Positions 5,386 through 24,624 of a stretch of 24,624 nt of DNA are shown here, piece after piece (position 1 is the first letter of the stretch; each line of letters opens with the position of its first letter). The notes beneath the pieces were generated by a model that had not been told where the DNA came from, did no database searches, and worked only from the letters and a program-made list of their open reading frames with translations. The DNA is from Ginkgo biloba (Eukaryota; Plantae; Ginkgophyta). The position numbers and the translations under genes were made by a program. The stretch is from assembly GCA_024626585.2 (NCBI GenBank), contig JANKJI020000002.1, forward strand, positions 44,635,656-44,660,279. Direction: 5' to 3'.

Positions 5386-5456
5386 GTTTTGGGAAGTGAT
5401 GATGCACTGACTGCCCTCTGCCTTGAGCGCTCGGAGAACCCTCCAACATATCCCAG
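5386..5456 (+). CDS. MRS2: Exon VLGSDDALTALCLERSENPPTYP(R)
   Basis: TTTGTAG| ... AG|GTATGA; equivalent of the MRS2 LLxDDxDMxxMYL motif; ends in phase 2. Confidence 0.88.
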
Positions 5457-5759
5457 GTATGACTTCATTGCATACTTCAGACTACTTCTTGATTTTCAGT
5501 GTTTATGTTCAGTTACTAAGCACATGCGAAGTGAGAAGAAAAATTATCAGCTAGTTGTTAGAAACTTGAAATTGTATTTAGCCTTAAGATAATCTTATGA
5601 AAACCTTCTGTTTGAAAGCATGTGTTCCATGATCATAATGATTTAAAGAAATATATCACCATATACTTTTAAGTTGTGAATGCATTTTTTTGCAAAGAGT
5701 AGGTGTCAAACTTTTAGTGACATAAGAAAACTTTTATAAATTTCTTGGAGGGGGGACAG

Positions 5760-5838
5760 GAAAGGATCACAACCCTTTGCAGAGCAAGATAAGCTTCGTC
5801 GAGCAGCTGCAGACATCATATTGACATATCAACGCCAG
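5760..5838 (+). CDS. MRS2: Exon (R)KGSQPFAEQDKLRRAAADIILTYQRQ
   Basis: CAG| ... CAG|GTGAAT; phase 2 to 0; equivalent of the EMLLExYxxQ helix. An in-frame alternative acceptor is possible at 5750/5751. Confidence 0.85.
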
Positions 5839-7019: not shown

Positions 7020-7320
7020 GCCGTGGACCTATGTTGTGTGACTTTAGGAGGCAATCTGGTGGCCGTAGAAGTGAAGAAAGTACCTCATTTAGATGCCAAA
7101 GCTGTGGTCTCTATAAAAGAAGTGAAGCAGCGGCTAATGCTACCTCATCTAGAGGCTATGGGTCAAGAATCCTCTAGGAAGGCCTAGTCAATGTCTAGGC
7201 CGTGTTACCTCGATTAGGGGCTGTGGGTCTAAAAGTCCTCCAGGAAGGCAACCTGGATATCTGAGTCGATGTTGAGTAGTTCTATGTGTGGAGTAGTGTC
7301 TCATGCATATATGGGTAGCT
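7020..7320 (+). repeat. Dispersed repeat, inverted homolog of 320-620
   Basis: Collinear nucleotide and peptide similarity to the reverse complement of 320-620. Confidence 0.8.
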
Positions 7321-7479
7321 CTATGAAAATTTTGGGGTTGTTTCTAGTCAGCAACTATGGTAATAGGTTGGGAAAATGAAGTAATGTATTTGTCTGTCCT
7401 CTGTCAGCCTCTCAGTTACTGCTTCTTGATGAAAACAGCCAAGCATTGCTGACTTGCATATCTGTGAAAGTTTGAGAGG

Positions 7480-8950
7480 AATATTCTTAACTCCTAATTG
7501 GGCATAAAATATAAAAGTGTTTCCCTATTCCCACCTCTAAGGATCAAAGTCTGCAAATGCACTGATCCCGAAGAGTACCATGATTAATCTCTACTCTAAG
7601 ATGGTGTCAAAAAATTCTAAGCCAGCCAGAGAGAAATCTCAACCCATGGGACCAGTGATGCGTGATGGATTCTGGATGATCAATGACACCATCTAAAATA
7701 TAGAGAAAAAGCTGAGCATAAAAGGCAAGATTGGAGTTAAGAGGCTGGTGAGGAGCAGTCCATGTGACCTGGGTGTATCTCTATTAGATGTCCTATCGAA
7801 TGGCTTCATTAACCTCCTTCCTACAAATGAGGAGATGATAGGGAGCATCCANNNNNNNNNNNNNNNNNNNNNNNNNNNNNNNNNNNNNNNNNNNNNNNNN
7901 NNNNNNNNNNNNNNNNNNNNNNNNNNNNNNNNNNNNNNNNNNNNNNNNNNNGGGGTTCCAAGTGAGCCAATTGGGCTTGGGGTTACTCAATGTTGTGGAT
8001 GGTTTGCTATTGCTTGGACCTATGCTAAAATGGATGGATTTTGAATGTGGTAATTATGTAGAAATTGGATAATTGATTGTAGCGATATTTGTAATCAAAC
8101 ATTACATTTTTCATTTTGTTGGCACTTGGAGGTTGTTTTGGGCTTGTTACATAATTTGGAGGATCAATGACAACATATGAAATATGGAGTAAGTGTTGAG
8201 CATAGCATGCATGTTTTGCACCAAGTCTGATGAGCAGTAATTCATGTGAATTGAGTGTATCTTTGATAGATCTCCTCTTGGATAGCTCCATTAATCTCCT
8301 TCCTAGAAGGGAGGAGATGATAGGGAGCATCCAAGGAAATTACTAAAGATATCCATGGTCTGTAAACGTGTTGAAACCTCCAAATACCAGCCCCGCCTAT
8401 GAGTGGAATGGTCTAGGTATGTGAGTCTCTAGTATGAGCACAAGGCAAGATGTGGGTATCAATCTCTCCCAAATTCTGTATTACCCATGTTACATCTCCT
8501 ATGAAGACAGGATATAAGCCTTGTAGGTAGTCTCAAGATAGAAAGAGCAAGCAACAAATTCAGCCTTGATAATAAATTGAGGAACAATGTGCTTACAATG
8601 GATGATCCTTTGAAGCATGATTGCTTGTATGCTCTAAATGTGTGCCACTCTATGTGTGTAAAGCTCAAACCCCAAATCTTTGACCCATAAAGTCGTGTAG
8701 GTTTAACAATGAAATGAAAAGATTGTGTCTTGGACCCAATATCCTAAAAGTGAAATTGGAAATACTCTCTCTAAGACTGCAAGGGATGCATATCCCTTTC
8801 ATAATCAAGAGTGTGGTGTACATCACAAGTTGAAAAAAGGCCTTGTATTCCTAACACCTAGATAAGAGGTTGTGACCTCCATAGCCTGCCCTCTAAAAGT
8901 AAAGTTGTTGGATAATTTAATGTTCGCCACATGCCACTTGACTATCTAAT
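7480..8950 (-). mobile_element. Heavily decayed Ty3/gypsy pol remnant (protease to RT-start region), intronic
   Basis: Minus-strand DAPYHLLPSRKEINGAIQE and DAPYHLLICRKEVNEAIR resemble the PYRxxxxxKxEIExxIxE start of gypsy RT. Many stops; weak similarity only. Confidence 0.45.
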
Positions 8951-9095
8951 TGTACTTTGAGTTGTACTTTAAATTAAGTCAAGTTAGTTGTCTTGCNNNN
9001 NNNNNNNNNNNNNNNNNNNNNNNNNNNNNNNNNNNNNNNNNNNNNNNNNNNNNNNNNNNNNNNNNNNNNNNNNNNNNNNNNNNNNNNNNNNNNNN

Positions 9096-9707
9096 NTTCA
9101 ATAAATGATGTACGCTATTCAGATTAGAGATGCTCTGAGAGAGGATACGACTGATTACACACTCTATTGATTGATGATTGATGCCGCAATAGCTTTTTCA
9201 TATATAGGCCTTTAGTGCGCTTTTCATAGGGATGACAATTATTCTTGACATTAATGTGACTATTCTATATGTTAACTAACGATTTTGGTAGTTCTGATAA
9301 CATTGCTGTTTAAGTTACACTAATTAATCTTTGTATTGTAGTTTNNNNNNNNNNNNNNNNNNNGTTTGCTGAAATGATTGAACATATGATCACTAACAAT
9401 CCGACACTGATTCTGGCTGTGATCAAGCGCTGTCTTATGTAATTGTGATTGAACACTGTCTTTTGGCTATGATCAAACAGTGTCTTCTGGCTGCGATCGA
9501 TCATTACTGGTGTTGCACTGTGACCAAAGATTGATATCTGAAACGATCGGCCTTTACTTGTTGCAGCCGGATACTGCTATGCTTGCTTTCAGTCTTATCA
9601 AGGTGTCAAAATACCTGCCAGCAGCTTCAGGCAGCTTCAGCTGCTTCAATTTGCCTTGTCCCTACGGCAAAGCAGGATGTACAACTTCCTATTAGCAGAT
9701 TCTAACA
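9096..9707 (-). mobile_element. Probable LTR (solo or partial) containing ~24-bp tandem repeats
   Basis: Minus strand starts TGTTAGAATCT (same 11-mer at 14087 on +); TATA-like CCTATATAT near 9205 on the minus strand; other end lost in the N gap. Confidence 0.45.
9405..9503. repeat. Imperfect ~24-bp tandem repeat, 4 copies (CTGTCTTYTGGCTRYGATCAAACA)
   Basis: Units begin near 9406, 9430, 9456 and 9480. Confidence 0.8.
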
Positions 9708-10766
9708 TATAGTGGAACATGAATGGAATCACAACCTTTGGATCCTCAACAATCTCCATCTGCACCCTCTAATGGCCAAATAAGTCTGGCACACTATCTA
9801 TATTAGTCAGTCGCACATGATGGATGTCTGGAACAAACTTGCACTTGCTCTTTACTCATAATGATTGTGCATTAAATGAGGCCTTATGTGACTATGTATA
9901 GGTGCAAAGGCACTCTTATTGGGTCTACATTCTTCTTGAAGTCACCCTTGGATAAGCCACGCATCAATATATCAGTGCCTAGATTTGCCCAGAGGTGATA
10001 TCTTCCACATGATTAATGTCTTGAAGGTCTATTTCTGCCATGTGTCTCCCTGACAACATACCTGCAAACTGAAAAATATTTGATAAGGCATAACTTCCTC
10101 ATGTAGAGACAAAAGTGGTTCATATGGCGATTTGAATTTATTGGCACGAGATACCNNNNNNNNNNNNNNNNNNNNNNNNNNNNNNNNNNNNNNNNNNNNN
10201 NNNNNNNNNNNNNNNNNNNNNNNNNNNNNNNNNNNNNNNNNNNNNNNNNNNNNNNNNNNNNNNNNNNNNNNNNNNNNNNNNNNNNNNNNNNNNNNNNNNN
10301 NNNNNNNNNNNNNNNNNNNNNNNNNNNNNNNNNNNNNNNNNNNNNNNNNNNNNNNNNNNNNNNNNNNNNNNNNNNNNNNNNNNNNNNNNNNNNNNNNNNN
10401 NNNNNNNNNNNNNNNNNNNNNNNNNNNNNNNNNNNNNNNNNNNNNNNNNNNNNNNNNNNNNNNNNNNNNNNNNNNNNNNNNNNNNNNNNNNNNNNNNNNN
10501 NNNNNNNNNNNNNNNNNNNNNNNNNNNNNNNNATACATTGCTACTAATGCTTTATATGTTCATTTTATAAACATTGGTAATTTGAATTCAGTGGATTTGT
10601 TTTGAATTGTACGTTCCTATAATATTTTTAAAATGTCTGAGTATAGTTTTTCTGTAACTGGACATTTTCAGCCTATGGTATCCACGAATCATCATTTCAG
10701 ACAAATTCGTTGGGGATGACCTTAAGTGATATTTGATCATAACAAATTATATATATGTTCCTTTAG

Positions 10767-10826
10767 GTTGATGACGCTGGAGGCGTGGTTGAAGAGCTGA
10801 GGAAAGGCATTGAATCAGCACAAGAG
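10767..10826 (+). CDS. MRS2: Exon VDDAGGVVEELRKGIESAQE (stalk helix)
   Basis: TTCCTTTAG| ... GAG|GTATGA; 60 nt, phase 0-0. Confidence 0.92.
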
Positions 10827-10965
10827 GTATGAATTTGTGGAGCCACTAATAGATGCTAATAATTGTGTTATGTGTTTTGCATATGTTTTCTTCAAGTCTT
10901 TATACTCTTGTGGGATTGTATGGTTTTATCAATTGTTCTGATTCATTTTTTTTCACAATATTAAG

Positions 10966-11051
10966 GTCTGGGAGCTTACGCTAGACACAACAAGAAATAA
11001 AATAATACGCATGAACCTTTTCATTTCTATGGCAGCATTATCATTCAGCTT
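10966..11051 (+). CDS. MRS2: Exon VWELTLDTTRNKIIRMNLFISMAALSFS(L): LDxxRN and start of TM1
   Basis: TTAAG| ... TT|GTAAGA; conserved LDxxRN motif. Confidence 0.95.
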
Positions 11052-11226
11052 GTAAGAATTATTCAATCCTCATCATTCTGTTCTGTAAANNNNNNNNNNN
11101 NNNNNNNNNNNNNNNNNNNNNNNNNNNNNNNNNNNNNNNNNNNGGGGCAGGTTTTCTTTGTGTGCACTTTGTTGGCAGAATACGATGATTGTTTATTCAT
11201 TTTGTTTCCTCATATTCTCATGGCAG

Positions 11227-11268
11227 AGCTACTGTTCCTGCAAGCTTCTTTGGCATGAACGTTATCAG
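11227..11268 (+). CDS. MRS2: Exon (L)ATVPASFFGMNVI(S): GMN selectivity filter
   Basis: GGCAG| ... AG|GTCTGC; GGC ATG AAC at 11252-11260; phase 2-2. Confidence 0.96.
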
Positions 11269-11448
11269 GTCTGCTTGGATTATTTGGTGCTTGGTAGCAT
11301 TGAAATGATCAATTGGTTTCTTGTGACATTACTTGTATAACTTACATACATATTGAGGTTACATCCAATCTTAATAGTTGTCCTAAAAATTGAATGCTTA
11401 CTTGGAAATGTGGTGTGTCTCTGTGAACTGAAACGATATCAAGTGCAG

Positions 11449-11572
11449 TGGACTGGAGGCTTCACCGAGGGCGTTCTATATAATAGTTGGAGCAACATCA
11501 GCATCTTCTGTATTTGTTGGTCTAGGACTTGTCTTGATGTTCCGTAAATTTCTTGATAAGCGACGTGCCCAG
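11449..11572 (+). CDS. MRS2: Exon (S)GLEASPRAFYIIVGATSASSVFVGLGLVLMFRKFLDKRRAQ: loop, TM2, basic cluster
   Basis: TGCAG| ... CAG|GTTTGG; SGLE loop, hydrophobic TM2, then basic RK..KRR residues. Confidence 0.94.
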
Positions 11573-11658
11573 GTTTGGTATCCATTTTTATTCATTGTAT
11601 ATAAGGCAATCCGTTTTATCTTGAGCAATCATTCAGCTTTTGAAATTTTCAATTTCAG

Positions 11659-11734
11659 GATCTTGCAGCTTTACAAGATCTTCTGAGCCATATTGATGAC
11701 ATTGATAATATTTTCCAAGTTTTGGCATCCAAAG
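11659..11734 (+). CDS. MRS2: Exon DLAALQDLLSHIDDIDNIFQVLASK(G): post-TM2 helical extension
   Basis: TTTCAATTTCAG| ... AAAG|GTACTC; open, amphipathic, follows an 86-nt intron. Confidence 0.9.
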
Positions 11735-12763
11735 GTACTCTATCATACTTAATTCTGTCCATTGCATGTTTCATATCCTGTATATCTAGCTCAGAGACAC
11801 TCTGCACAAAAACCAGAGATTGTGAACTAAACATAAGGATTCAATCTTCTATTCTTATGATTAGATGAGGGATTGCGAATTCAATAAAGTACATTATCTC
11901 CTGTGCATTTAGGATCTCCAATACAAGGAAGCTAGTAGTGCATCTTTTCTGTTTCTTGTCTTACGCAGCTCTCATAATTATTAGATATATTCTTTGCTTT
12001 GTCTTTTGTTGAACCTTTTGGTTTGACTAACTTTACCATATTTTGTAAGTTCTAAGAGCAGCCATTTCTGGCTAAATAAATTAATTTTATTGACAAGGAA
12101 AAAATAATGTTTCAATGCAAAGTGAAAATTTTTAGCGTAAAGTCTGTTTCTTAATGCATTATTTTCCATTATTACAATATTGCAGGATTGCATATTTATT
12201 TTTGTTTGTATGGTGAATTGTATGTATCAGGGACTGCATACTGTAAAAGAAACTGAACCAAGTATCCTAGGTGATGTGAGGCTCTGGTTCCCCAGATTGG
12301 ATATCGTTTTGGATGCCAACAGGTCTATGTACTGTAGCATGTGTTAGTGATGTGACCCAACTAGAATCAAATTAGTGGGAAAAGACACTTGTAACCACTT
12401 TCTAGTCATACGATGTGCAAGTTTTTGAAATGGCTTCATAGCTAGTGGAAGTCAAACATACATTGCTGTGAAAACTACCCATACATAGGATGCCCTATGT
12501 TGAGGAATTCATGCCGATTTTATAATATGACATGCCACCATGTTGTTATGAGAAATCATTGGACAGGAGCCATTTTTGTTGTCAAAATGTTTTGGAGGCA
12601 GAAACAGCTCTGGTACTAGTCTAGTGGGATCTAATTACAAAGTACAATAGTGGAAACTTCCATGAGGTATTTCTCATGATCCTTCCTGCACACAGAATGT
12701 ATTGCTTAGATAGGAAGGTGACCTATGGTTTCATTGACTTAGCTCTTTTCTTCTTGTGACTCG

Positions 12764-12883
12764 TCATCTTCCGTTGACCCTTCACCTTCTAATCACCTTT
12801 ACTTCCAATGACTTGTCACCTCTCTTGACACTTTACTTTCTGGTAATTCTTTACCTTCCATTACCTTTCATCTTCCAATGACG
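12764..12883. repeat. Degenerate ~17-18-bp pyrimidine-rich tandem repeat (TTCAYCTTCCAATGACC-like), about 7 copies
   Basis: Recurring tcatcttccgttgacc / ttcaccttctaatcacc / tttacttccaatgact / tttaccttccattacc / ttcatcttccaatgac. Confidence 0.7.
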
Positions 12884-13362
12884 ATGCTAGACCTAGGTCA
12901 ATGGTCAGGTATTGTTGTGTATTGAGACTCTAAATAGCAGTTACATTGCAACTACATGCATCCATCTATCCCTGAATTTTGCCACTAAAAATAAACCCAC
13001 CAGGCTTGAATGGGTCTAAATTCATGATTGAACATTATTTGTTCTTTGTAGTGCTGAATGGAGTGAGAAATATTATCTTCAAAGGTTCATTTTTACATAT
13101 AAGCTTAGTAGGAATTCAAGGACTCTTCCACTTGTCGCTTCCTTGTTTTGATAGTAAAGCTGGATCTTTTGTTGGAGCATCTCAACTAACAAAATTGATT
13201 CAAAATGAATCAAGAATCTCAATATCTAGTTATCTTGTCAAGCATGACTTCTTCATCTACTATGAAGGGGCTAAGATGAGCAAGCCAAAGCTGTGTGGCT
13301 GCAAGGCTTAAATTTTTTGTTTGCACGACATTTGGCATTACAGGATAGGAGGTGAAAAACTG

Positions 13363-13563
13363 AGGGTGAAACCTATCAAGGAAATCCCTTTTCCATTAGG
13401 AAAGAAATAAGTTCAATATTTCTTCCAAAAGATCAATTTATTAGGAAGATTTATCCTTGGATTTGTGCTAGTCCCCTTACTAATTAATAAGTGGCTAAAA
13501 AACAAGGTGAGGTTAAAATTTGGAAAAGAGGCCAAGAAGGCCTTTAAAGAAATCAAGAAGTTA
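13363..13563 (+). mobile_element. Ty3/gypsy RT thumb/connection fragment
   Basis: RVKPIKEIPFPLGKK*VQYFFQKINLLGRFILGF...LINKWLKNKVRLKFGKEAKKAFKEIKK matches the P.xKKxxQSFxGxINFxRRFIPNF...LKK..F.W..E...AF..IK consensus. Confidence 0.75.
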
Positions 13564-14539
13564 TTCTAACAACTTTTGTAAATATTGTATATATCATGTT
13601 TTAGTTCTTATTTTTAGTTGTCTTCTTATTGAGGTAATAAGTTAATTATTTTAATTTTGCATATCTCGTTGGGGGTAACACAAAATAAGGAGGGCACTTG
13701 TTGACACCTAATTTGTAATCAATTAAAAAGTAATNNNNNNNNNNNNNNNNNNNNNNNNNNNNNNNNNNNNNNNNNNNNNNNNNNNNNNNNNNNNNNNNNN
13801 NNNNNNNNNNNNNNNNNNNNNNNNNNNNNNNNNNATAAACATATGCATTGCACTGTGATGACTCATATTTTATAAATGAATATCATTAGCATGCAAGGCT
13901 GTTAGGCAGGACTGTTAAAGTTTGTATTAGACATCGGCTGAGTAGGTTCTAGAAATAGAATCTAAGATCCAAAAACTCTAGAGGCCATGAAGGTCGAGAT
14001 TAGGAAACTACAGGGAAGACAACCTCCTGCAAACCCATTCTTAGAAAGTCTATGGTTGTTTGTGTGTGTGTGCCAAAAGTGATTGTTGTTAGAATCTAGA
14101 TGTTATGATTTGTTACATCCATACACCCAACTCTCTTTGTTTGTGTTGAATGCAATTTGCATCGCATGTTGTAATTTCATCTGCAACGGGTTTGAAACAC
14201 GTGATGAAAGATATATTGATCGAGATTGTGAGGGTCTGCAAAGGAGCAAGGTACTATCAATACAACATTTAGACTAATTGAAGATGATTACAAGTAGGGA
14301 CAACCCTTTATTATAGAAATAAGGTGCCTTCTTATATAGGAATGGCAGTTGTTAAATCCCATACATAATTGTGCCCAATGTTCTATTCTCATTATCTTAA
14401 TTTGACACTTAGCCTTAATATCACTCTAAGCATGTATGCCCATAAACATCTATGCACATCATTTTATTAGATTCGTTGCTTATATTAAGTGAGGCTGAAT
14501 ATATTTTTCTACGACTAATAGAAAGAAGGTGAAATTGCA

Positions 14540-14790
14540 ATCACATATTGAGAGATACATGCTTTTATGAACACAATTACTTTTCTTCATCAAGTGATTG
14601 AGTTATGAAGTAACTTTTGCATTGCGTAAGATCTAGAATTACCCTCTTATCCACTGAAGCTTGTCTGCAACAATGTTGTTCTTATTTGTGAGCCTTTCAC
14701 ATTGATTATGAAATGTGGCCAAGCACTCAATCACACTTGGATAGATGCCAATGTAGACACTTTTGGAGAGCTAGCACCTTTAGAGTATGG
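14540..14790 (+). repeat. LTR-like direct repeat, homolog of 15970-16225
   Basis: Collinear shared blocks TTATGAAGTAAC, CAACAAT, GAGCCTT, ATTGATTATGAA.TGTGGCCAAG, AGATG, TTTTGGA, CACCTTT. Confidence 0.8.
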
Positions 14791-15188
14791 GATAGATAGC
14801 CCGTAGGGCCTATGGTGAGGCCTTATCACTAGCTTCTTTCCAACTACCATCCATGTATAGACGGGAAAGCCTTAATAGAAACAAGGTGCTTCTTTGTACA
14901 TGGATGGCAGTTATTGAATCCTATACATGTGCTCATGTTCTCGTATTTTCACCATCCTACTCACATACTCAACCTAAAGGTTACTCTAAGAGTGTACATC
15001 GTAAAAATGTTTGTCTACATCATTGCATTGACATTAGTTAAGACTTAACATTTATTCTATGAGGAAGAGTCTTTTTCGATGATTTCTCNNNNNNNNNNNN
15101 NNNNNNNNNNNNNNNNNNNNNNNNNNNNNNNNNNNNNNNNNNNNNNNNNNNNNNNNNNNNNNNNNNNNNNNNNNNNNNNNNNNNNNNN

Positions 15189-16320
15189 AAGCACTTGGGA
15201 TGAAAGTTTATCTTACATTCAACATGCATATAACCGAGCCTTGCATAGCTCAACGAACCATAGCCCATTCATGACATGTTTTGCTTTTTAGCCTATGGCT
15301 CCATTAGACATAGCATTTAAGGCTCCAATAACTACCACTTCACCTCAAACACTGAAGCAGCAAGATAAAGATGAGAGATTTATAGCTCACATTTAGATAA
15401 TACACAAGGAGGTGGAATCAATTCTAACTCGCATGCAGATGAAGTACAAGCAAAGGCATGACAAGCATAGAGGCAATCATGATTTTTTGATTGGTGACAA
15501 GGTATAGCTACACTTGCACAAAGACCACTTCAAAGGACAGAATAAGAAGATGTTGCCAATCAAATATGGGCTTTACACAATTATGAAAAAGGTCAATGAC
15601 AATGCCTTCAAGCTAGATATACCATAATATCTTGTTTTACATCTAGTCTTTAACATAGAATTGTTCAAGCCCTATGTAGCCCCCCTTATTGAAGAACTAG
15701 ATAGTCTACCAAAAGTGCCAAGGGATTTAGAGCCAGATTTTATGACCCCCATGCCCAGCATTCAAATTTTGGAGGCTCGAATGAAGCAAATTTGGCCAAA
15801 GGAAATTCCCTTGTTCAAGATTGCGAAAGCAAGGCAATATTCGTACCATATGAACTGGTATTCAAAACAGCAAATAAAGTCAAATTCCCACTGTTGCATG
15901 AAGAAGCAATAAGGGACCATCTCTCTCCAACAAGGAACACATGATCTAAGAGTCCTTGGGTCAAAATTTCAATTGTATATACAAGAGCTTCATGTATTTA
16001 TGCATGCAACTTGATTCTCTTCAACAAGTTATTAGCAAGAATTATGAAGTAACCCCTCCACTAGGTGAGATCCTAGATTATCCCCTTGTCCAATACAAAC
16101 ACGCATCCAACAATATTCCTTTTAGTTGCGAGCCTTCCATATTGATTATGAATGTGGCCAAGTCCTCGATTACATTGGGAAAGATGGCAAAGTTTTGGAT
16201 AGTCAACACCTTTTAGAAAAGTATTGTTCCAATTATTGAGTAAGTTGCTCATGGTGTTTTCATTTGTGGTTGTTGCGTGCTTGATCCCCAAGGTCAAAAT
16301 TTGGATTAAAATCGAAACAN
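15189..16320 (+). mobile_element. Ty3/gypsy 3' end: integrase C-terminal half plus probable 3' LTR (from about 15943)
   Basis: TWDESLSYIQHAYNRALHSSTNHSPF...KYKQRHDKHR..DFLIGDKV*LHL...KKMLPIKYGLYTI..KVNDNAFKLDIP*YL.LHLVFNIELFKPY is the integrase core end plus GPY/F module, with internal stops. Confidence 0.92.
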
Positions 16321-16659
16321 NNNNNNNNNNNNNNNNNNNNNNNNNNNNNNNNNNNNNNNNNNNNNNNNNNNNNNNNNNNNNNNNNNNNNNNNNNNNNNNN
16401 NNNNNNNNNNNNNNNNNNNAACTATTTTTGTTGTTTGTATACATTGTTATAAACAATATGAGCCTGAAATCTGTAATCTATTCAGATAAATTAGTGTAAA
16501 CTACTGAAAACCCTAAGAAGGGGAAAACAACTCATATAGAGTAGGGTGACTCCATTTGATGGTTCTAAATGATGCATTTATGTGTATTTATGCTTCTATG
16601 ATGCAAGATAATTGTATTTAACACAAGAAATCATTCCTTTGGCAAAATATGCAGATAAT

Positions 16660-17100
16660 CCCCTACTTGACTGCAAAACCCTAGGGACTTGTCTAGGGTA
16701 GCATGGCATTAACCGGATTCCTGCTAGGGGATTAGTATCCCTGACCAAAGGCACCTCTTTTTGACTATTCTTTTGCCCTAAGCATGCATTTAGTATGCGC
16801 CGACTGGCAATGGGTCGTAGGTACCTAATGAGGGGCTAAGTTGGTGCTCAGGGTTTTACCCTCATTATCGGTTCTATACATTGGTGCAGCCATAGGGTTT
16901 GGTGACTATACCAAAAATAAATATAAATAAATAAATTGCTAGTAGGGGTGGATATCCTAGCTGCTAGGATTATCCCGGTGTCAAAGAGAGGTTGAATCAG
17001 ACCTATGCCTGTCAGCCATTCTATGTTGGGTGAAGGTGTGGAGTCAGATTAGTCATAGCGGCTAGGTGTTGATGATATGTGTCTTCTGCAGCCAGAGGTT
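16660..17100 (+). repeat. Repeat of the same family as 1240-1800 (LTR-like), intronic
   Basis: Collinear shared blocks as listed for 630-1942. Confidence 0.75.
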
Positions 17101-17403
17101 TGGTGTCAACATAGTAAGCGCTTTTAGACGGTCCGCATAGCCAACAAGCCAACAATAGGTGGCTAGGGTCAATGCTGCAAGTTGACCTTAGTTCTAAAAG
17201 TTTCTTTTTTGAAACCTGTCATTGTACAGTATTTCACATGCTGCTATCATAAGTGAACAGAAATAAATACCTACAATGTATGAGCATATGTATTATTGCA
17301 TTTTGATTGCTGAAATCAATATCTGACTTATGTGTGCAAGTTGCCTTGCCTATGCCTCTATAATGATGTCTTATTTGCAGATCTAAATAGTTCTTTGATG
17401 CAG

Positions 17404-17495
17404 GTTTAGAAGGCGACACTGTTACAGCCTTGACCTTGACTTCCTCACAAATTGATGATGTACTACACATTGCCAAGAAAAATGTGTTGTCTCAT
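17404..17495 (+). CDS. MRS2: Exon (G)LEGDTVTALTLTSSQIDDVLHIAKKNVLSH
   Basis: TTCTTTGATGCAG| ... CAT|GTAGTT; converts phase 1 to phase 0 exactly as needed to join the flanking exons; same frame as ORF 17430-17612. Confidence 0.78.
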
Positions 17496-18921
17496 GTAGT
17501 TCTTTGCTTGCCCAACAAAGCTAACGAGCTTCTTGATCTGAATACAATGTTAAATGGGAGCGCTTTTAAAACTGATATCTTTAAGTGCAATAAAACAACT
17601 ACTATTGTTTAGATCTCCATGTTCCTTCTTCGCAAAGGCCTGATTTTTCAGATTAAGGGGCATTGAGCTTCCAGGAGTATTAAATCCAGGTTGTTGCAAT
17701 AGGTAATGAGACCTCTGATCTGCTACATTATCCACCTCCATGTGATTAGACAGGCTCCCTCCATGTGCAAGTAATTGCTTCATTTAACAGCCATGTCTTC
17801 CAAGCATACCTGTGATCTGAAGATTGTTTCAAGAATATCATTCTTCATATATAAGCTCCGCTATGTTTTGATGTACTATTTCTAACCAACCAGTCCCCTA
17901 AAAATTGAGTTGTATCTTATGACAGGGTTAAATGATTTCCCTCAATGTAAGATCCAAATAAATTTGCTAGGCTGTTTCTCCTGACGTGAATGCATTTGTA
18001 AGGATAAGCACGTACACTTGGAATGAAATATGAATTCGCATCTCAACATGGTTGGGAGGACTCCTGCAAGGAAACGGGCGAGATGAGTTCTTAGAAGCTG
18101 ACCCTTTATGTTTATTAATGGCTTTTATTTACACTCCAAAAGGAGATTAGTATCCTCTTCTCAAATTTTGACAGAATTTAAGATATAGATTTGTCTTACA
18201 ACAAAGAATCAAGTACAACTATCAAAGTTTGAAAATTTATATATCAAGTACTGCTATTTTGAAGATGGGCATAGAACTAGACAAGCTTGTGTTTGAACAA
18301 TTTTGGCATCAGAAGGGAGACTTTGATTCAAACTCATATTTGCTAGAGATTAGGAAGCATGATTCTTCTGCCAGTCTTTCTTTGCTTCTGGGCATGATTG
18401 TTTTCTCTTGAAAAAGTGCTGCTTCGTATATAGTTCTCGAATTCTACTTGGACCTAACAACTATCAGTTATTCTTATACATGCATTTCAGCTGAAGAGTA
18501 TGTCATTTCTGAGCCTTGACGTCTTCACTCTTATTCAATTGTAATATGAAAATTCTGATATACCAGGTTTCAATTCGAATTTGTTGTTCATGCCAGCTAT
18601 TGCTTAAGGACTAAAATGATGCTCTTTTTTATTTTTAATATTTAATCTCACTGCACTTGTCTTTTGTGTTCAATTTCACATTTTTTCTTGACTTTATTAA
18701 ATGCGATAAAGACCTCTCTCCCCAACAAATGAATTTTGCTAGAAATGTTTCAGAATTTTGGTGCTTTAAAGAAGTTTATTTTTACAAATATGAATAGCTG
18801 TCTGTAGCTCTTTGTTTTTTTAATGGGCTTGGAATATAAAGGTCATGAAAAATTAAAGATACTATTGGTCAATGAAAAAATCATTAACACCATGTCGTGA
18901 AATACTGTGTTTTATGTGCAG

Positions 18922-18978
18922 AGAGAAATTGACTTGATGTTCCGTATGTTTGACAACAATCGGAACGGCCAACTTGAG
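18922..18978 (+). CDS. MRS2: Exon REIDLMFRMFDNNRNGQLE: EF-hand entering helix and loop positions 1-9
   Basis: TTTTATGTGCAG| ... GAG|GTGGGT; 57 nt; FxxFDxNxNGxL pattern. Confidence 0.9.
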
Positions 18979-19125
18979 GTGGGTTTTTCATGGCATTCTG
19001 TAAAATTAATGACAGGAGACATGTTTTCCCACCAATAGCTTGTATTATCTTATTTGATTATAAAGTCATTGATGTGTCACTTCTATTCTACAACACATAG
19101 CATAATATTCTACCTTCATGTACAG

Positions 19126-19167
19126 GCTCGTGAGTGGAATGCAGTAGCACGACGACGCTCAAGGTGA
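19126..19167 (+). CDS. MRS2: Terminal coding exon AREWNAVARRRSR*
   Basis: TGTACAG|GCT CGT GAG TGG ... TGA; supplies the position-12 Glu and aromatic position 13 of the EF-hand. Confidence 0.88.
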   Translation, partial: AREWNAVARRRSR

Positions 19168-19791
19168 AAATCACCAGGCCAAGCTTGTGGAATGACTATT
19201 TTCTAGAGCCAGTGGGACCAAGGATTAGGATCCCAACCCGATGGTGCACAGCACAGCATCACATCCAACTTAACAATGTCATTCTAATGGAAGCAGTAAA
19301 TTCTCAAAGAAGAATGGCATCCCCTAATGAATTGATGAAGCTGATATACTACACCACAAACTAAGAAAACAGGAGATCTGATTCTACATTAGAGGCCAAG
19401 CTGTAATAGAGATCTGCAATGTACAATCAAGGGTCAAATAGTAGCTTCTGTTTGTTATTCAGAATGTGGCAGAAGGCACTGCAATGGTTGGAGTACCTTG
19501 TCAAGAGAGTGATCAAACCACATTAAATATGACTGTAGATCAAAGCATAGGGATGAAGCATTTTAGTGTTTAGAATTAGCAATACCCCTATGGTGATAAT
19601 TTAAGTGTAGTGAGCACTGTTTATGCTGGCCATGTATTATATTCCAACTGTTATGAAATCATTAATATTGAGAAGATGGTGTTATATTTAGCAGGTCTTG
19701 AAGCTGCTGTTCTCGGCTTATTGCCAAAGTGTACTGTGTTTTGCACCAGAGAGTGCTTTGCAGTGTGTATGGATGGTTGGCATTCGGTTCA

Positions 19792-19814
19792 CTCTCTCTC
19801 TCTCTCTCTCTCTC
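19792..19814. repeat. (CT)11 microsatellite
   Basis: Direct reading. Confidence 0.95.
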
Positions 19815-20329
19815 CAATGATGTACATGCTAAAAGAANNNNNNNNNNNNNNNNNNNNNNNNNNNNNNNNNTGATCAGAGCCCAGGTTCGTGTAGTTGGCT
19901 ACACTCATCTGTGGTGTAATGGCCTTTTTTTATTGTAACCATGTTTGGGCATTCACAACCATCTAGCCATTAGATACTAGACCAAAACCATTTAATTGCA
20001 ATGTTCATAAACATACATAGATGATTTCAAAAGATAATGACTATGGAGCAGAGTGTTGTGACTGTTTGGCTTTAGGCTACAATTATTCAATTTTATAAGC
20101 AGATAAATTATGAAGCAGTGTTACAAATCTTTGGATTTGGATGATAGAAAGTCTAAGCAACGGCTGAAGCGAAGNNNNNNNNNNNNNNNNNNNNNNNNNN
20201 NNNNNNNNNNNNNNNNNNNNNNNNNNNNNNNNNNNNNNNNNNNNNNNNNNNNNNNNNNNNNNNNNNNNNNNNNNATGAACAAAGGGAGAAGTTATTTGTT
20301 ACAAGAACTCAAATTAAGAAGAGTTTTCT

Positions 20330-23300
20330 TTTTGTAAATCTTTGATCCAGGGAGTCAAAACAATTTTTTGTCCAAAGCTATTGTAAGATAATTTGAGTTA
20401 GTTGCAACCTCACATATGCATCGATACAAGTTGGATTGGCTTAACAAGTCTTCAGTGCAGGCCGTCACCAAACAATAAAAGTTGAAATTTACTATTACAA
20501 TAGTATATATTGATGAAGCTATATTTGATGCAATTCCGTTAGATGTCTGTGGAGTTATCTTTGGCAATCCCTATTTATGGGACCAAGATGCACTATTTTG
20601 AAGGAGGACTAATCAATATTGGCTGGTTGAAGAAGGAAAGATTTTCTTGATCCAATTGCAAAAGAATCAAGATCCCTTGTAGCTAGTTTTAGTAGCACAA
20701 GCCAAGAGGCTCATAAATGCATATCATAAGTTTGTGTTTCTCTACTATTGGCCGCATATAAATGAGACAAATAGTTTGCAACCCAAGACGAACATTTTGC
20801 AACATGAGCCGAATGGTTTACATAATGACACAGACAAACTACAAAAGGAACTGACAATGTAACCTAAACAATAGGTAGAGTTGAATTAGGTGTAGTCCAA
20901 GTATGCATAATTATTTGAGGAACCTAATGGATTGCCTTTGATGCAGACCATCCAACACTCCTTTGATCTTCAACAAGATTTTGTATTACCGAAAGATGAC
21001 ATTTTAATTTTCAACAAGAGTTGGAAGGACCACTTGCAACATTTGGATGCAGCATTGGAGTTGTTGCAACAATAGAAGCTAAAAGTCAATTTGAAAAAAT
21101 GTGACTTTAGATGTGCACAATCACTTGGGTTTTGTTGTGGATGAGGATGGAATTCGGGTGGATTCTAAGAGCATGTGGAAGGTAATGGAATGGTGGGAAC
21201 TGACTAATCTTCTAGAATTGAGAAGTTTCATGGGTATGCCCAACTACCTTTGTCAGTTCATAAATCATTTCTCTGAAGTTGGTAAACCATTAAATTACCT
21301 GAAAAAAAGTGGTAAAGCATTCAAGTGGACAGTATTGGAGCGTTCAAATTTCGATGAACTGAAGAAGCAGATTTACAATACACTAGCACTTGTATTGCCA
21401 AACATCAACTTGTGTTTTGAACTCNNNNNNNNNNNNNNNNNNNNNNNNNNNNNNNNNNNNATCTTCGGTGTAGTACTGATGTAGAAAGGGAGGCTAGTAG
21501 CTTTCCATTGAGAAACATTCATTGGATTTGTGAATAACTATTCAACATACAGTAAGGAAATGTATGCCATTGTTCAAGCAGTGAAACATTGTCAACATTA
21601 TCTCTATGGAAATGAGACTGATCCATTTGGATCATAAAACCACTCCAATATTTACAAACCTTATCGAATTGTAGAATGCAAGGCATTTGAAATGGGTCAC
21701 CTTTTTACAATAGTTTCATCTAGTTATTAAATATAAGGGAGAACAAAACAAGGTCATTGATTATTTGTCTAGACCACTAGTAAGTATCTTTACTAACCTT
21801 CTTGAAGTGCAAAATTTTTAGTTTTGCAGACTTTAAAGAAATATATGCAAATTTTGGAAGGGTATATTCATTTTTGGTTGATATCATTCTGGTAAAGAGG
21901 ATCATTATAAGGATTTCAATCTAAAGAATGGACTTAAATTTTGGTTGAATGTCTTGTGTGTGCCTCAAGGTGCACACTGACTTCAAATTCTTTTTGAGGT
22001 CCATTATTTCAAAGTGTCGAGACATTTGGAATCTCGAAAAACTATTCATAATTTGTAACAATATTGTTTCTAGCAAGGATTGCTCAGGAAGTGGAGAGGG
22101 TTGTTTGTAATTGTTTGATATATAGTGTTACTAAATCGACAANNNNNNNNNNNNNNNNNNNCTTATAAACCCCTTTTAGCATTGCATAGGTCTTAGGATG
22201 CAATTGCCATGGATGTCAACGTGACTATTTATTTGTCATAGTGAATTGTTTCAGCAAGATGCCTATGTTGATTCTATTCAAGAAAATAGTGACGGGGCAA
22301 CAAGTAGCAAAGTTGTTCTTTGAAGAAATATAGAAGTATTTTGCGTTGTTGTCTACTATAGTTTTAGACAAAGACAAGATATTTCTATGTAGTTTTTGGA
22401 TACCTTATAGGGGTTTATGGACACTAAGTTGTAGATAAGCACAACTTTCCATCCACATACGAATAGACAATTAGAAGCGATCAATAAGACAATTGTACAG
22501 ATGTTACGTATCTATTGTCACAAGCGTTCAAAGAGATGGCATGAATTTATACCTTATATACAATATGAATATAATCGAGACATGCATGGTTCCATTGACA
22601 TGTTGCCTTTTGAGACTTATTTTGGGTTTCATCCTCAAGCACTATTAGATCTGTCTTTTCATAAAGGTAAGGAAGAAATTGATGGGGGGACATCATAGCA
22701 ACAAGTGACTCAATTAAGGGAGTAGTCCATGNNNNNNNNNNNACAAAACTTTTAAAAGAGCACAACAAAAGCATAAGCATAGTGTTACAGTCCAAAAAAT
22801 TTGGGTTACTTTGTTAACCAACTCAAAGCCAAGGTTTCCTTGGAAGCAAAAACATTTTTTTTCAAATTTGTTGTTGAGCGCTCTAGTAGGGGTCATTTTG
22901 AGAGAGAAAGATAACAAAAAGTTACCTAGGGAAGTATGCCAATTAAGGGAACTTCTTTCTAGAGGGTAGTGGAAGCTATCGAGATAACACCCAAGGGCCT
23001 CTTGAAGCATCCAGAAGCTTCAAGGATTAGTTAGGATCTTAAGTGGAATTTGGTGCCTCTCCTATAGTATTTATATGCATGAGTTTTGTCTTGAGGACAC
23101 ATTTTAATCANNNNNNNNNNNNNNNNNNNNNNNNNNNNNNNNNNNNNNNNNNNNNNNNNNNNNNNNNNNNNNNNNNNNNNNNNNNNNNNNNNNNNNNNNN
23201 NNNNNNNNNNAATTTCACATGTAACTAAGATTCTACCTACACAAGACAATTTCAATAGTAAGAACACGATTACCCCCTTGAAAACTAATCAAATGCTTTT

Positions 23301-23460
23301 GCATAAACTCTATTAAAACCTCCAACACCAAGCAGGTACATCAACATGGGTCTACATTTTATTTTCAACGTGGACCATTTCAGGTTGTATGAACCTTCGT
23401 TACTTGATCTAGAAGACATGGAGTGTGATACTCTTCCAAGAGAACATCTTATTCTTGATG
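20330..23460 (+). mobile_element. Decayed Ty3/gypsy pol: protease, partial RT, RNase H, integrase
   Basis: FDPGSQNNFLS and PLDVCGVIFGNPYLWD (protease); DDILIFNKSWKDHLQHL, LKKCDF, ELRSFMGMPNYLCQFINHFS (RT); NYSTYSKEMYAIVQAVKH (RNase H); FHPHTNRQLEAINKTIVQMLR..WHEFIPYIQYEYN (integrase); IFNVDHFRLYEP (GPY/F tail). PR-RT-RH-INT order is gypsy; many stops and frameshifts. Confidence 0.95.
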
Positions 23461-24624
23461 CTATGAGAGTTTTAGAGCATGATTTCATATTATAGAGAGG
23501 GGTGTACTCACCGTAATACTATTCCCTTATACAAAGTTAGAATCAAGGGAATACCTTCACAATTAGGTATATGGTTTTCAGCAAAGCTAGTCTCTTTTTT
23601 TTAAGGAATAAGAGAAGAGGATAAGTTGTCTCAGAAGAGGGAAACAAGTTTGAAGTTGTGAAACAACAAGGTTAAACCCATGTAACAATGTGTATTAAAC
23701 TTGTATATTATTAAAAAATAAATAATAGAGAATCCTTTAGGAATTTATATCTTATTTTTCTTTTATTAGTACGAGATTAATAAAACTCTAAAAATCTCAT
23801 TTTTGTTAGCATATGTTATTCTTCATCTCCATTTGTTCTTCATTTCCATCTTGTGCGTTTCATTGTTATTACCAAGATAAGAGGTTGATCTATAAGAGGT
23901 AAATCACCCTTTCTTCACACTCATGCCACTAAGGCACTACACTTAGAGAGACACACAAAAATAATTTATAATAATGTGACAAGTTGTAGACACCAAACAT
24001 TCGAAATAATAGCAATTAGTATGCGAAAAATATGAATAGAATATTGTACTTTCACCACATCTCTACCAGTGTCACATATAAAAGATGGAAGGCCGAGATA
24101 AAGAAAGAAAGGGATAGAATGAACAATTTATATTATTGTTATTGTCTTAGTTGTCGATAACTAGAAGAGTATTGGTAATTTTTCTTAGCAATGATAAGCT
24201 ACTTAATCTTCCACCTCAAAATTCCCTCACTTGATTTAACAATATGAAGTTCTATCCTCGCAATATTTTATGGTTAATTTCCATAGTTCCATCTTGAAAT
24301 AAAAGGTTTTGAATGATGAACTGTGGCAATTTTCTACGTTCATTGTACAATCACTCCATATGTTTGAAGGTGGCATTAGTTGCATTGGTTGTTTTTGTAA
24401 TAACATGCAATGAGGATAGAAGAAAAAGAGTTGCCTTTCAAGATGTTCAAGCAACATATATATTATAGGATAGTGAAATTAGAGAGGACTATGATGCATC
24501 TTCATTATGCATCCTTGATTTTTAGGGTCGTAAGACATCATGGATTGTTTTTTATAAGAATGTATGCACATACATGTGTGATATTGTAGATTAAACTCAA
24601 TGCATACAAAAACCATAGCTACAA

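What the first reader, a model, noticed from the sequence alone, without database searches (positions are those of the whole stretch)
11449..19167. MRS2/CorA Mg2+ channel fused to a C-terminal canonical EF-hand: candidate Ca2+-gated magnesium channel
Seen: after TM2 the spliced frame stays open for about 98 aa and ends in REIDLMFRMF-DNNRNGQLEARE-W, a textbook 12-residue EF loop (D1, N3, N5, G6, L8, E9, E12). The loop is completed only by splicing 18978 to 19126, which supports the model. Established: bacterial CorA, yeast/human Mrs2 and Arabidopsis MRS2/MGT have no EF-hand, and both termini of 2-TM-GxN channels lie on the same (cytosolic/matrix) side. Inference: a pentamer would carry five built-in Ca2+ (or Mg2+) sensors coupled to TM2, linking Ca2+ signalling to Mg2+ flux. 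I have an unverified recollection of similar architectures in algal gene models, so this may be an old, uncharacterised subfamily rather than a unique fusion.
Basis: partly seen in the sequence, partly recalled or inferred. Interest (0 to 1): 0.88.

Follow-up and report, generated by a model that had tools for sequence, protein, structure and literature searches.

The report
Magnesium channel with built-in calcium sensor
The window holds the 3' half of a Ginkgo gene for an MRS2-type magnesium channel whose tail is an EF-hand calcium-binding domain; this fusion is real and shared by green algae, mosses, ferns and conifers, none of the homologues found came from a flowering plant, and I found no study of it.

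Summary
The window is Ginkgo biloba; its annotated model Gb_38940 is a 195-aa fragment.

- **Supported exons.** Homologues support MRS2-type exons at 5386-5456, 5760-5838, 10767-10826, 10966-11051, 11227-11268 (FFGMN) and 11449-11572 (TM2). They also support tail exons at 11659-11734, 18922-18978 and 19126-19167. The junction 18978/19126, which completes the EF loop DNNRNGQLEARE-W, is confirmed.
- **Family.** More than 30 proteins carry the same MRS2-like body and EF-hand tail. They come from streptophyte algae, liverworts, mosses, lycophytes, ferns and gymnosperms. In Marchantia the whole protein is one intronless genomic ORF.
- **Wrong exon.** Exon 17404-17495 has no homology to the family's middle exon. 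The real exon (about 71 nt, ...VS.EEFKK..R.HPST.SMQE) is absent from the assembled letters. It is probably hidden in one of the three intron gaps.
- **Known background.** The family appears to correspond to the published MRS2/MGT "Clade III", which has no angiosperm members. No paper I could search mentions its EF-hand.
- **Untested.** Ca2+ (or Mg2+) control of gating is inferred. RNA reads could not be obtained.

The parts
5386..5456 (+). MRS2-like exon (VLGSDDALTALCLERSENPPTYP...). It is the first exon of the gene visible in the window; the exons for the N-terminal ~285 residues are not in the window.
   Evidence: tblastn of Cryptomeria, Taxus and Logan homologues and blastn of transcript L001; AG/GT boundaries read.
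5760..5838 (+). MRS2-like exon (...KGSQPFAEQDKLRRAAADIILTYQRQ).
   Evidence: tblastn and blastn: 98% nucleotide identity to L001 over 53 nt.
10767..10826 (+). Exon VDDAGGVVEELRKGIESAQE (stalk helix).
   Evidence: 100% identical to Cryptomeria and Taxus; included in Gb_38940.
10966..11051 (+). Exon VWELTLDTTRNKIIRMNLFISMAALSFS(L): end of the stalk helix and TM1.
   Evidence: tblastn and blastn; carries the family-invariant W-E-L..D..R-N.
11227..11268 (+). Exon (L)ATVPASFFGMNVI(S): the GMN selectivity motif at the end of TM1.
   Evidence: G and M are invariant and N nearly invariant in the family.
11449..11572 (+). Exon for the short loop and TM2, ending ...MFRKFLDKRRAQ.
   Evidence: 100% match to Gb_38940; 79-86% identity to gymnosperm homologues.
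11659..11734 (+). First tail exon DLAALQDLLSHIDDIDNIFQVLASK + G (phase 1). It continues the TM2 helix and supplies the entering helix of the first, ligand-less EF-hand.
   Evidence: Tail HMM 38 bits, 1.3e-10; 24 of 25 residues identical to Cryptomeria; the donor at 11734 is also used by Gb_38940.
11913..11935 (+). Terminal exon of the annotated model Gb_38940 ((G)SPIQGS, stop). No homologue ends this way, so it is probably the annotator's way of closing the frame.
   Evidence: the family alignment shows no such ending.
13735..13834 (.). Assembly gap inside the long intron. One of three places where the missing middle tail exon (~71 nt) may lie.
   Evidence: the middle exon is absent from all assembled letters.
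15089..15188 (.). Assembly gap inside the long intron, followed by a gypsy-type integrase fragment at 15189-15909.
16320..16419 (.). Assembly gap inside the long intron.
17404..17495 (+). It keeps the frame but is not homologous to the family's exon; most likely intron sequence.
   Evidence: No HMM hit. Mean local score 18.5 against 43-60 for true members, and 17 of 310 other intron windows score as high.
18922..18978 (+). Exon REIDLMFRMFDNNRNGQLE: entering helix and loop positions 1-9 of the canonical EF-hand.
   Evidence: Tail HMM 36 bits, 8e-10; 18 of 20 aligned residues identical to Taxus; the Adiantum gene has an intron at the same place after LE.
19126..19167 (+). Last coding exon AREWNAVARRRSR + TGA: loop positions 10-12 (E12), W13 and the exit helix. 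The exon continues as 3' UTR to at least 19212.
   Evidence: Best ungapped match in the window to the residues after LE in five homologues, 49 against 20; blastn of L001 aligns 19124-19212.

Best explanation
Window 5386-19212 (+ strand) is the 3' half of the Ginkgo biloba member of a conserved branch of MRS2-type (2-TM-GMN) magnesium channels.

**Architecture (shown).** After TM2 the helix continues through RRAQ-DLAALQDLL.H.DDIDDIFQ. It then leads into an EF-hand pair of about 65 residues. The first hand has no acidic ligands, like the pseudo-EF-hand of S100 and calbindin D9k. The second is canonical: D-x-N/D-x-N/D-G-x-L-E-x-x-E-W. In the Ginkgo assembly the exon for the exit helix of the first hand is missing, most probably inside one of three intron gaps. 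That exon is about 71 nt and encodes roughly G..VS.EEFKK..R.HPST.SMQE.

**Mechanism (inferred, about even odds).** The channel is a pentamer in an organellar inner membrane. The N-terminal domain and the C-terminal tail lie on the same side, the matrix or stroma. Each subunit carries one working metal site, so there are five per channel, each held on a rigid extension of TM2. Ca2+ binding there, in competition with Mg2+, would change how the tails pack under the pore and so tune Mg2+ entry.
For: **Organism and annotation**
- The only hit for the TM2 exon among 1.84 billion representatives is Gb_38940 of Ginkgo biloba, at 100% identity.

**Family**
- Searches with Gb_38940 and with an Adiantum homologue returned MRS2-like proteins of up to 719 aa, the full-length ones about 460-720 aa. 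Sources are Klebsormidium, the 'SM...' EukProt models, Marchantia, Riccia, Physcomitrium, Sphagnum, Ceratodon, Selaginella, Diphasiastrum, Adiantum, Ceratopteris, Cryptomeria, Taxus and Welwitschia.
- The tail is conserved through the whole set.
- Pfam across 36 members: MRS2-like in 33, EF-hand_1 in 22, EF-hand_7 (the pair model) in 21, best E 3.9e-9.
- The family profile hits human MRS2 at 1e-34 and fungal Mrs2 at 1e-23 over profile positions 65-415. It then hits CML18, troponin C, MICU2 and S100A5 over positions 442-512.

**One gene, not two**
- The Marchantia gene is an intronless 1830-nt ORF.
- Logan contig L001 (1974 nt, run SRR10393247) carries an uninterrupted 534-aa ORF.
- Welwitschia P0002 is a Trinity ORF.

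**Gene structure**
- Adiantum has separate exons GESSRMTREHFEQILKAHSSTQFVRK | RELDLIFRMFDGNRNRMLE | ASEWNT..., with introns at the same places as 18922 and 18978/19126.

**Window exons**
-, as listed under the parts.
- In tail exons G, I and J, compared with L001: 33 identical codons, 12 synonymous-only changes, 11 amino-acid changes.

**Working metal site**
- In 31 tails: D1 31/31, N/D3 28/31, N/D5 31/31, L/I/V8 31/31, E/D9 29/31, E12 28/29.

**Fold**
- The AlphaFold2 tail model (pLDDT 71) shows two helix-loop-helix units joined by a beta bridge.
- All top Foldseek hits are EF-hand pairs: CRACR2a, S100 proteins, calbindin D9k and polcalcin.
- In the full-length Cryptomeria model, helix 406-451 runs unbroken from TM2 into the tail.

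**Targeting**
- Homologue N-termini are rich in R, A and S and poor in acidic residues.
Against: - There is no RNA evidence from Ginkgo.
- One tail exon is absent from the assembly. Without it, 11734 joined to 18922 is out of frame, so the Ginkgo copy could be broken.
- The only annotated model ends early (GSPIQGS, stop) and has no EF-hand.
- The structure models have only moderate confidence (pLDDT 71), and the Foldseek E-values are about 0.02.
- Metal binding, selectivity, pentamer geometry, localisation and any effect on gating are untested.
- The absence from angiosperms rests on a capped word-index search and one paper's tree.
Confidence: 0.8

Rival explanations
1. The Ginkgo copy is degenerate. 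The middle tail exon is truly lost, so the gene either makes a tail-less channel through the annotated terminal exon 11913-11935, or it is a pseudogene. The EF-hand exons would then be relics.
For: - The middle exon has no match anywhere in the window by protein, HMM or nucleotide search.
- The annotated model Gb_38940 ends GSPIQGS, stop.
- No Ginkgo transcript-derived protein with the tail appeared in the searches.
Against: - All nine visible exons are open, keep their splice sites and are 78-100% identical in protein to conifer homologues, including the last two exons.
- The tail exons show 12 synonymous-only changes against 11 amino-acid changes.
- The intron holds three gaps of unknown length, and the window has 19 gaps in 24.6 kb.
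- A 71-nt exon is easily lost in such an assembly.
Confidence: 0.13
2. Ginkgo has replaced the family's middle exon with a lineage-specific exon at 17404-17495.
For: - It has AG and GT boundaries and keeps the frame: 92 nt, the same phase class as the expected 71 nt.
- It shows a faint h-T-x-x-Q-h pattern like the family's V-S/T-x-x-E-F, and only 22 of 500 shuffles reach its score.
Against: - No HMM hit.
- Its score of 18.5 compares with 43-60 for true members, and 17 of 310 other intron windows do as well.
- The neighbouring exons are about 90% identical to conifers, so an unrecognisable middle exon would be odd.
- It lacks the invariant His and the nearly invariant Phe of that segment.
Confidence: 0.05
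3. The architecture is as in the best explanation, but the canonical hand is a Mg2+ sensor rather than a Ca2+ sensor. It would report matrix or stromal free Mg2+ and close the channel as negative feedback, adding to the N-terminal Mg2+ sites known in CorA and MRS2.
For: - The loop is rich in Asn and has Glu at position 9 in 23 of 31 members.
- From general knowledge, not tested here: mixed Ca2+/Mg2+ sites such as the parvalbumin CD site have an acidic residue at position 9, and many EF-hands are Mg2+-occupied at millimolar Mg2+.
- The domain sits on a Mg2+ channel, on the side that Mg2+ flows to.
Against: - Glu at position 12 is kept in 28 of 29 members. It is the bidentate ligand typical of Ca2+ sites; Mg2+-selective hands tend to have Asp there (general knowledge).
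- No binding data exist.
Confidence: 0.3
4. The EF-hand exons belong to a separate downstream gene, or are a chance open frame.
For: - The motif alone is within chance for a window of this size.
- A gap-ridden intron of about 7 kb with retroelement fragments separates it from the channel exons.
Against: - The same tail follows TM2 in every homologue. This includes an intronless genomic ORF in Marchantia and transcript contigs.
- The tail HMM hits the exon at 8e-10.
Confidence: 0.02

Closest known systems
Mitochondrial MRS2 / Mrs2 channels (human MRS2, PDB 8IP3 and 8TUL; fungal Mrs2, PDB 8Q8Q), members of the CorA 2-TM-GMN superfamily
   Same: - The family profile matches them at 1e-34 and 1e-23 over the N-terminal domain, stalk, TM1, GMN and TM2.
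- Pfam MRS2-like (PF22099) is found in 33 of 36 members.
- The N-termini look like organellar presequences.
   Different: - The match to the solved MRS2 chains ends just after TM2 (chain residue 394), and no EF-hand family proteins were hit through the MRS2 chains. From memory, human and yeast MRS2 have no EF-hand in their tails.
- This branch has a conserved tail of about 90 residues that folds as an EF-hand pair on an extension of the TM2 helix.
Plant MRS2/MGT family, 'Clade III' of Ishfaq et al. 2021 (PMC8733655)
   Same: - The paper describes a third basal clade with members in lycophytes, mosses, liverworts and algae and none in angiosperms.
- Its Table S1 lists Mapoly0032s0166 as MpMRS2. 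That is the Marchantia protein P0013 found here.
   Different: - The paper does not mention an EF-hand or calcium binding and does not sample gymnosperms or ferns.
- That MpMRS2 sits in Clade III is my reading of the gene names, not of the figure.
S100 proteins and calbindin D9k (EF-hand pair with a non-canonical first hand)
   Same: - They are among the top structural matches to the tail model.
- The layout is the same: a first hand without the usual acidic ligands paired with a canonical second hand.
   Different: - They are soluble small proteins, with 12-24% sequence identity to the tail.
- The first loop here is shorter than the 14-residue S100 loop and is probably not a metal site at all.
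Channels and transporters with built-in EF-hands (plant TPC1, TPK1 and RBOH; mitochondrial MICU1/2 and LETM1); recalled from memory, except that MICU1/2 matched
   Same: An EF-hand fused or bound to a transport protein, reading Ca2+ on one side of the membrane.
   Different: None is a CorA/MRS2-type Mg2+ channel. No homology beyond the EF-hand itself.

Membership tests
CorA/MRS2 2-TM-GMN magnesium channels | G-M-N motif at the outer end of TM1 | tested here: met
   FFGMNV is encoded at 11249-11266. G and M are invariant and N nearly invariant in the 36 homologues.
CorA/MRS2 2-TM-GMN magnesium channels | Two C-terminal transmembrane helices joined by a short loop, preceded by a long stalk helix | tested here: met
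   Exons D-F encode ...IIRMNLFISMAALSFSLATVPASFFGMN-VISGLEASPRA-FYIIVGATSASSVFVGLGLVLMF (read exon by exon). In the Cryptomeria model, helix 313-397 is followed by an 8-residue loop and helix 406-451.
CorA/MRS2 2-TM-GMN magnesium channels | MRS2-like N-terminal alpha/beta plus helical domain | tested here: inconclusive
   Only its last part (exons at 5386-5838) is in the window. The exons for about 285 N-terminal residues gave no tblastn match. Homologues carry it: PF22099 in 33 of 36, and the profile matches human MRS2 at 1e-34.
CorA/MRS2 2-TM-GMN magnesium channels | Pentameric assembly and Mg2+ conduction | not testable with these tools
   Needs expression, complementation or flux assays.
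EF-hand (canonical helix-loop-helix metal site) | 12-residue loop with ligands at positions 1, 3, 5 and 12, Gly at 6 and a hydrophobic residue at 8 (PROSITE PS00018) | tested here: met
   DNNRNGQLE (18952-18978) plus ARE-W (19126-19137) fits every position. Read by eye across the junction; the joined peptide was not sent to any tool. 21 of 31 homologue tails fit PS00018 at this loop.
EF-hand (canonical helix-loop-helix metal site) | Flanking helices, and pairing with a second hand through a short beta bridge | tested here: inconclusive
   Met in the Cryptomeria homologue model and by Pfam EF-hand_7 in 21 of 36 members. In Ginkgo the exon for the first hand's exit helix is missing from the assembly.
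EF-hand (canonical helix-loop-helix metal site) | Binds Ca2+ (or Mg2+) | not testable with these tools
   Needs calorimetry, 45Ca overlay or a similar assay on a recombinant tail.
Plant MRS2/MGT Clade III (PMC8733655) | Groups with non-angiosperm MRS2 proteins such as Marchantia Mapoly0032s0166, apart from the MGT1-9 and MGT10 clades | tested here: inconclusive
   The visible Ginkgo exons match P0013 (MARPO_0032s0166) and its relatives, and that gene is in the paper's table as MpMRS2. I built no tree that includes MGT1-10.

The most novel reading that the evidence does not exclude
Non-flowering green plants and streptophyte algae have an organellar Mg2+ channel that is directly gated by Ca2+ through five EF-hand pairs fixed to TM2. 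It would link Ca2+ transients in the matrix or stroma to Mg2+ uptake, and flowering plants would have lost it.
Probability: 0.35. Interest if true: 0.78.

Novelty: new variant of a known kind. Interest (0 to 1): 0.62.

Why it matters
**What is new.** The gating of MRS2 and CorA channels is understood through Mg2+ sites in the N-terminal domain. I found no CorA/MRS2 channel with a built-in Ca2+ sensor described in the papers I could search. Here the sensor is conserved from Klebsormidium to conifers, and its ligand positions are nearly invariant, so it is under selection.

**Why it is testable.** It gives a direct handle on Ca2+-Mg2+ cross-talk in plant organelles. Marchantia appears to have one such gene and it is intronless, which makes knock-out, tail deletion and D1A/E12Q experiments straightforward.

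**Evolution.** It also raises the question of why angiosperms seem to have lost it.

**For the Ginkgo genome.** Gb_38940 is a mis-built fragment. The assembly lacks one exon of the gene.

Tried and rejected
- **Sequencing runs.** I tried once with a stretch containing N and once with an N-free stretch, then gave up. Read laying therefore could not be used, and there is no RNA evidence from Ginkgo.
- **Pfam on single exon frames.** Only the EF exon gave a hit, and it was below threshold. The CorA exons are too short to score alone.
- **PDB search with the TM2 frame.** Nothing found.
- **The search for homologous proteins with the 84-aa frame 11432-11683.** Nothing found, because the length window excludes full-length relatives.
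- **The look-up of encoding contigs.**
  - Gb_38940, Cryptomeria P0015 and P0031, and Selaginella P0025 are not on record.
  - The Taxus gene spans 148 kb, so no DNA was returned.
- **A faint match just upstream of the EF exon** (18847-18897, EKLKILLVNEKIINTMS against EELKKLLRSHPSTESMQ). I rejected it as the missing exon for three reasons.
  - It ends in a stop codon 21 nt before the acceptor.
  - It lacks the HPS motif.
  - It gets no HMM score.
- **Possible donor at 19164/19165 (AAG|gtgaaa).** Rejected, because transcript L001 stays collinear with the genome to 19212.
- **Literature.** The amphioxus preprint found with the terms 'CorA' and 'EF-hand' is irrelevant: 'cora' matched 'coral'.
- Everything was done exon by exon, by reference, or on homologues returned by the tools.

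Full report
**What the window is.** The 24.6-kb window has 35% G+C and 19 runs of N. It carries decayed Ty3/gypsy fragments at 15189-15909 and 20479-23500. A search of 1.84 billion representative proteins with the TM2 exon gave one hit at 100% identity. That hit is Gb_38940 of Ginkgo biloba from EukProt, a 195-aa model.

**Checking the observation.**
- TM2 ends ...MFRKFLDKRRAQ at 11572.
- Exon 11659-11734 reads DLAALQDLLSHIDDIDNIFQVLASK plus one base.
- Exon 18922-18978 reads REIDLMFRMFDNNRNGQLE before gtgggt.
- After a good acceptor, 19126-19164 reads AREWNAVARRRSR, followed by TGA.

On its own the EF motif is not beyond chance. The first nine loop positions are expected 1.1 times per window in six frames. 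With the two hydrophobic helix positions the expectation is 0.16. Pfam scores the exon at 19.1 bits, below the cut-off. The case therefore rests on relatives.

**Relatives.** I used Gb_38940 itself as a query over residues 58-188. It found a Welwitschia Trinity ORF at 76% identity, an Adiantum protein and a Logan ORF. All three continue after TM2 into DLAAL...REIDLMF..FD.N.NG..E..EW.

A second search, with a 429-aa Adiantum member, returned the family. Its full-length members are about 460-720 aa. Sources name them 'Magnesium transporter' or 'MRS2-7'. They come from these species:
- Klebsormidium and three 'SM...' EukProt models;
- Marchantia and Riccia;
- Physcomitrium, Sphagnum and Ceratodon;
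- Selaginella and Diphasiastrum;
- Adiantum and Ceratopteris;
- Cryptomeria, Taxus and Welwitschia.

No angiosperm protein appeared.

The tail is conserved throughout. Pfam finds MRS2-like in 33 of 36 members, EF-hand_1 in 22 and the pair model EF-hand_7 in 21. The family profile hits human MRS2 (1e-34) and fungal Mrs2 (1e-23) over positions 65-415. It then hits CML18, troponin C, MICU2 and S100A5 over positions 442-512.

**One gene, not two.**
- In Marchantia the whole 609-aa protein is a single intronless 1830-nt ORF in genomic DNA.
- A 1974-nt Logan contig from run SRR10393247 carries an uninterrupted 534-aa ORF with the tail.
- In Adiantum capillus-veneris the 82-kb gene has separate exons GESSRMTREHFEQILKAHSSTQFVRK | RELDLIFRMFDGNRNRMLE | ASEWNT.... 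Its introns fall before RELD and after LE, at the same places and phases as 18922 and 18978/19126 in Ginkgo.

**Mapping onto the window.** tblastn of the homologues and blastn of the transcript contig give exons at 5386-5456, 5760-5838, 10767-10826, 10966-11051, 11227-11268, 11449-11572, 11659-11734 and 18922-18978. They also give 19126-19167, followed by 3' UTR to 19212.
- A tail HMM hits only 11659-11739 (1e-10) and 18910-18981 (8e-10) in the whole window, on both strands.
- The residues after LE in five homologues match best exactly at 19126, scoring 38-49 against 15-22 for the next best.
- The junction 18978/19126, the donor at 11734 and the acceptor at 18922 are therefore all supported by homology.
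- The exons for the N-terminal ~285 residues are not in the window. The Taxus gene spans 148 kb, so they probably lie further upstream.

**The wrong exon and the gaps.** In gymnosperm relatives a 24-residue segment lies between ...SK and REID. In Cryptomeria it reads GAVVSQEDFKKFIRIHPSTKSMQE. It corresponds to bases 1503-1566 of the transcript contig, and it has no match anywhere in the window.

- It gets no HMM score.
- Its mean local score is 18.5, where true members score 43-60.
- Seventeen of 310 other stop-free windows in the same intron do as well.

The three gaps named by the scan program all lie in this intron. No visible exon crosses one, and their flanks share nothing. The simplest reading is that the 71-nt exon is hidden in a gap. 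A real loss in Ginkgo cannot be excluded, and I put it at about 13%.

The annotated model closes the frame with a nearby exon (11913-11935, GSPIQGS, stop) that no relative has. It also starts with two exons (9374-9439 and 9559-9681) that match nothing in the family.

**What the tail is.** Across 31 tails the second loop keeps its metal-binding positions.

| Loop position | Residue | Count |
|---|---|---|
| 1 | D | 31/31 |
| 3 | N or D | 28/31 |
| 5 | N or D | 31/31 |
| 8 | L, I or V | 31/31 |
| 9 | E or D | 29/31 |
| 12 | E | 28/29 |

The first loop has no acidic ligands. It does keep the hydrophobic position 8, an acidic or amide residue at position 12, and Phe at 13.

AlphaFold2 on the Cryptomeria tail (pLDDT 71) gives two helix-loop-helix units joined by a beta bridge. 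All top Foldseek matches are EF-hand pairs: CRACR2a, S100 proteins, calbindin D9k and polcalcin. Their probability is about 1, but their E-values are only about 0.02. In the full-length model the TM2 helix (406-451) runs unbroken into the tail.

**How it most likely works.** Three things are shown:
- an MRS2-type channel body;
- a conserved EF-hand pair with one canonical site per subunit;
- that pair sits on a helical extension of TM2.

The rest is inferred from the known topology of CorA and MRS2 and from the presequence-like N-termini. On that reading, the tail lies on the matrix or stromal side next to the N-terminal regulatory domain. There would be five sites per pentamer. Occupancy by Ca2+, or by Mg2+ in the rival reading, would alter gating. 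None of this was testable here.

**Known or new.** A 2021 paper describes a third basal MRS2/MGT clade without angiosperm members (PMC8733655). It lists the Marchantia gene found here as MpMRS2. It never mentions an EF-hand. Five further full-text searches found no paper on an MRS2 or CorA channel with an EF-hand. The domain hits are, however, already present in precomputed Pfam tables. I therefore rate this a new variant of a known kind. It is real and conserved, its function is unstudied in the papers I could search, and it is not unique to Ginkgo.

Noticed in passing
window 9374-9439 and 9559-9681: The first two exons of the annotated model Gb_38940 (MIEHMITNNPTLILAVIKRCL..., ...LLCLLSVLSRCQNTCQQLQAASAASICLVPTAKQD) match nothing in the family. 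The homology-supported exons at 5386-5456 and 5760-5838 are left out of the model, so its 5' part looks spurious.
   Followed up: partly
window 20479-23500 (+ strand): A decayed Ty3/gypsy retroelement, with reverse transcriptase, RNase H and integrase frames broken by stops, frame shifts and four gaps.
   Followed up: no
window 15189-15909 (+ strand): An integrase-like retroelement fragment (STWDESLSYIQHAYNRALHSSTNHSPF...) starts right after the gap at 15089-15188, inside the long intron. It may be why the assembly broke here.
   Followed up: no
window about 7775-7851 and 8265-8335: Two copies of a repeat (...INLLPTNEEMIGSI and ...INLLPRREEMIGSIQ) lie on either side of the gap at 7852-7951. 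The minus-strand frames are also similar.
   Followed up: no
L002 1001-2830 (Marchantia) compared with L004 501-82436 (Adiantum): The Marchantia member is intronless. The fern gene spans 82 kb and the Taxus gene 148 kb, each with many introns. This is either wholesale intron loss (for example by retroposition) in the liverwort line or heavy intron gain and expansion in vascular plants.
   Followed up: no
P0038 and P0039 (ENA and JGI metagenome proteins, 541 and 528 aa): These are distant relatives at about 30% identity, with LLGMN or LLGMT in place of FFGMN. They have an insert of about 38 residues between the two hands and the loop DRDGDGRIDAEREW. They may be green-algal and may extend the fusion beyond streptophytes.
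   Followed up: no
P0029 (Riccia sorocarpa) and P0024 (Sphagnum): Their tails depart from the family after DDIDDI.. (P0029) or after the loop (P0024). These are probably gene-model errors rather than real losses.
   Followed up: no
window about 19790-19837: A short CT/GA-type simple repeat (frames read SLSLSLSLS) runs into the gap at 19838-19870, downstream of the gene.
   Followed up: no
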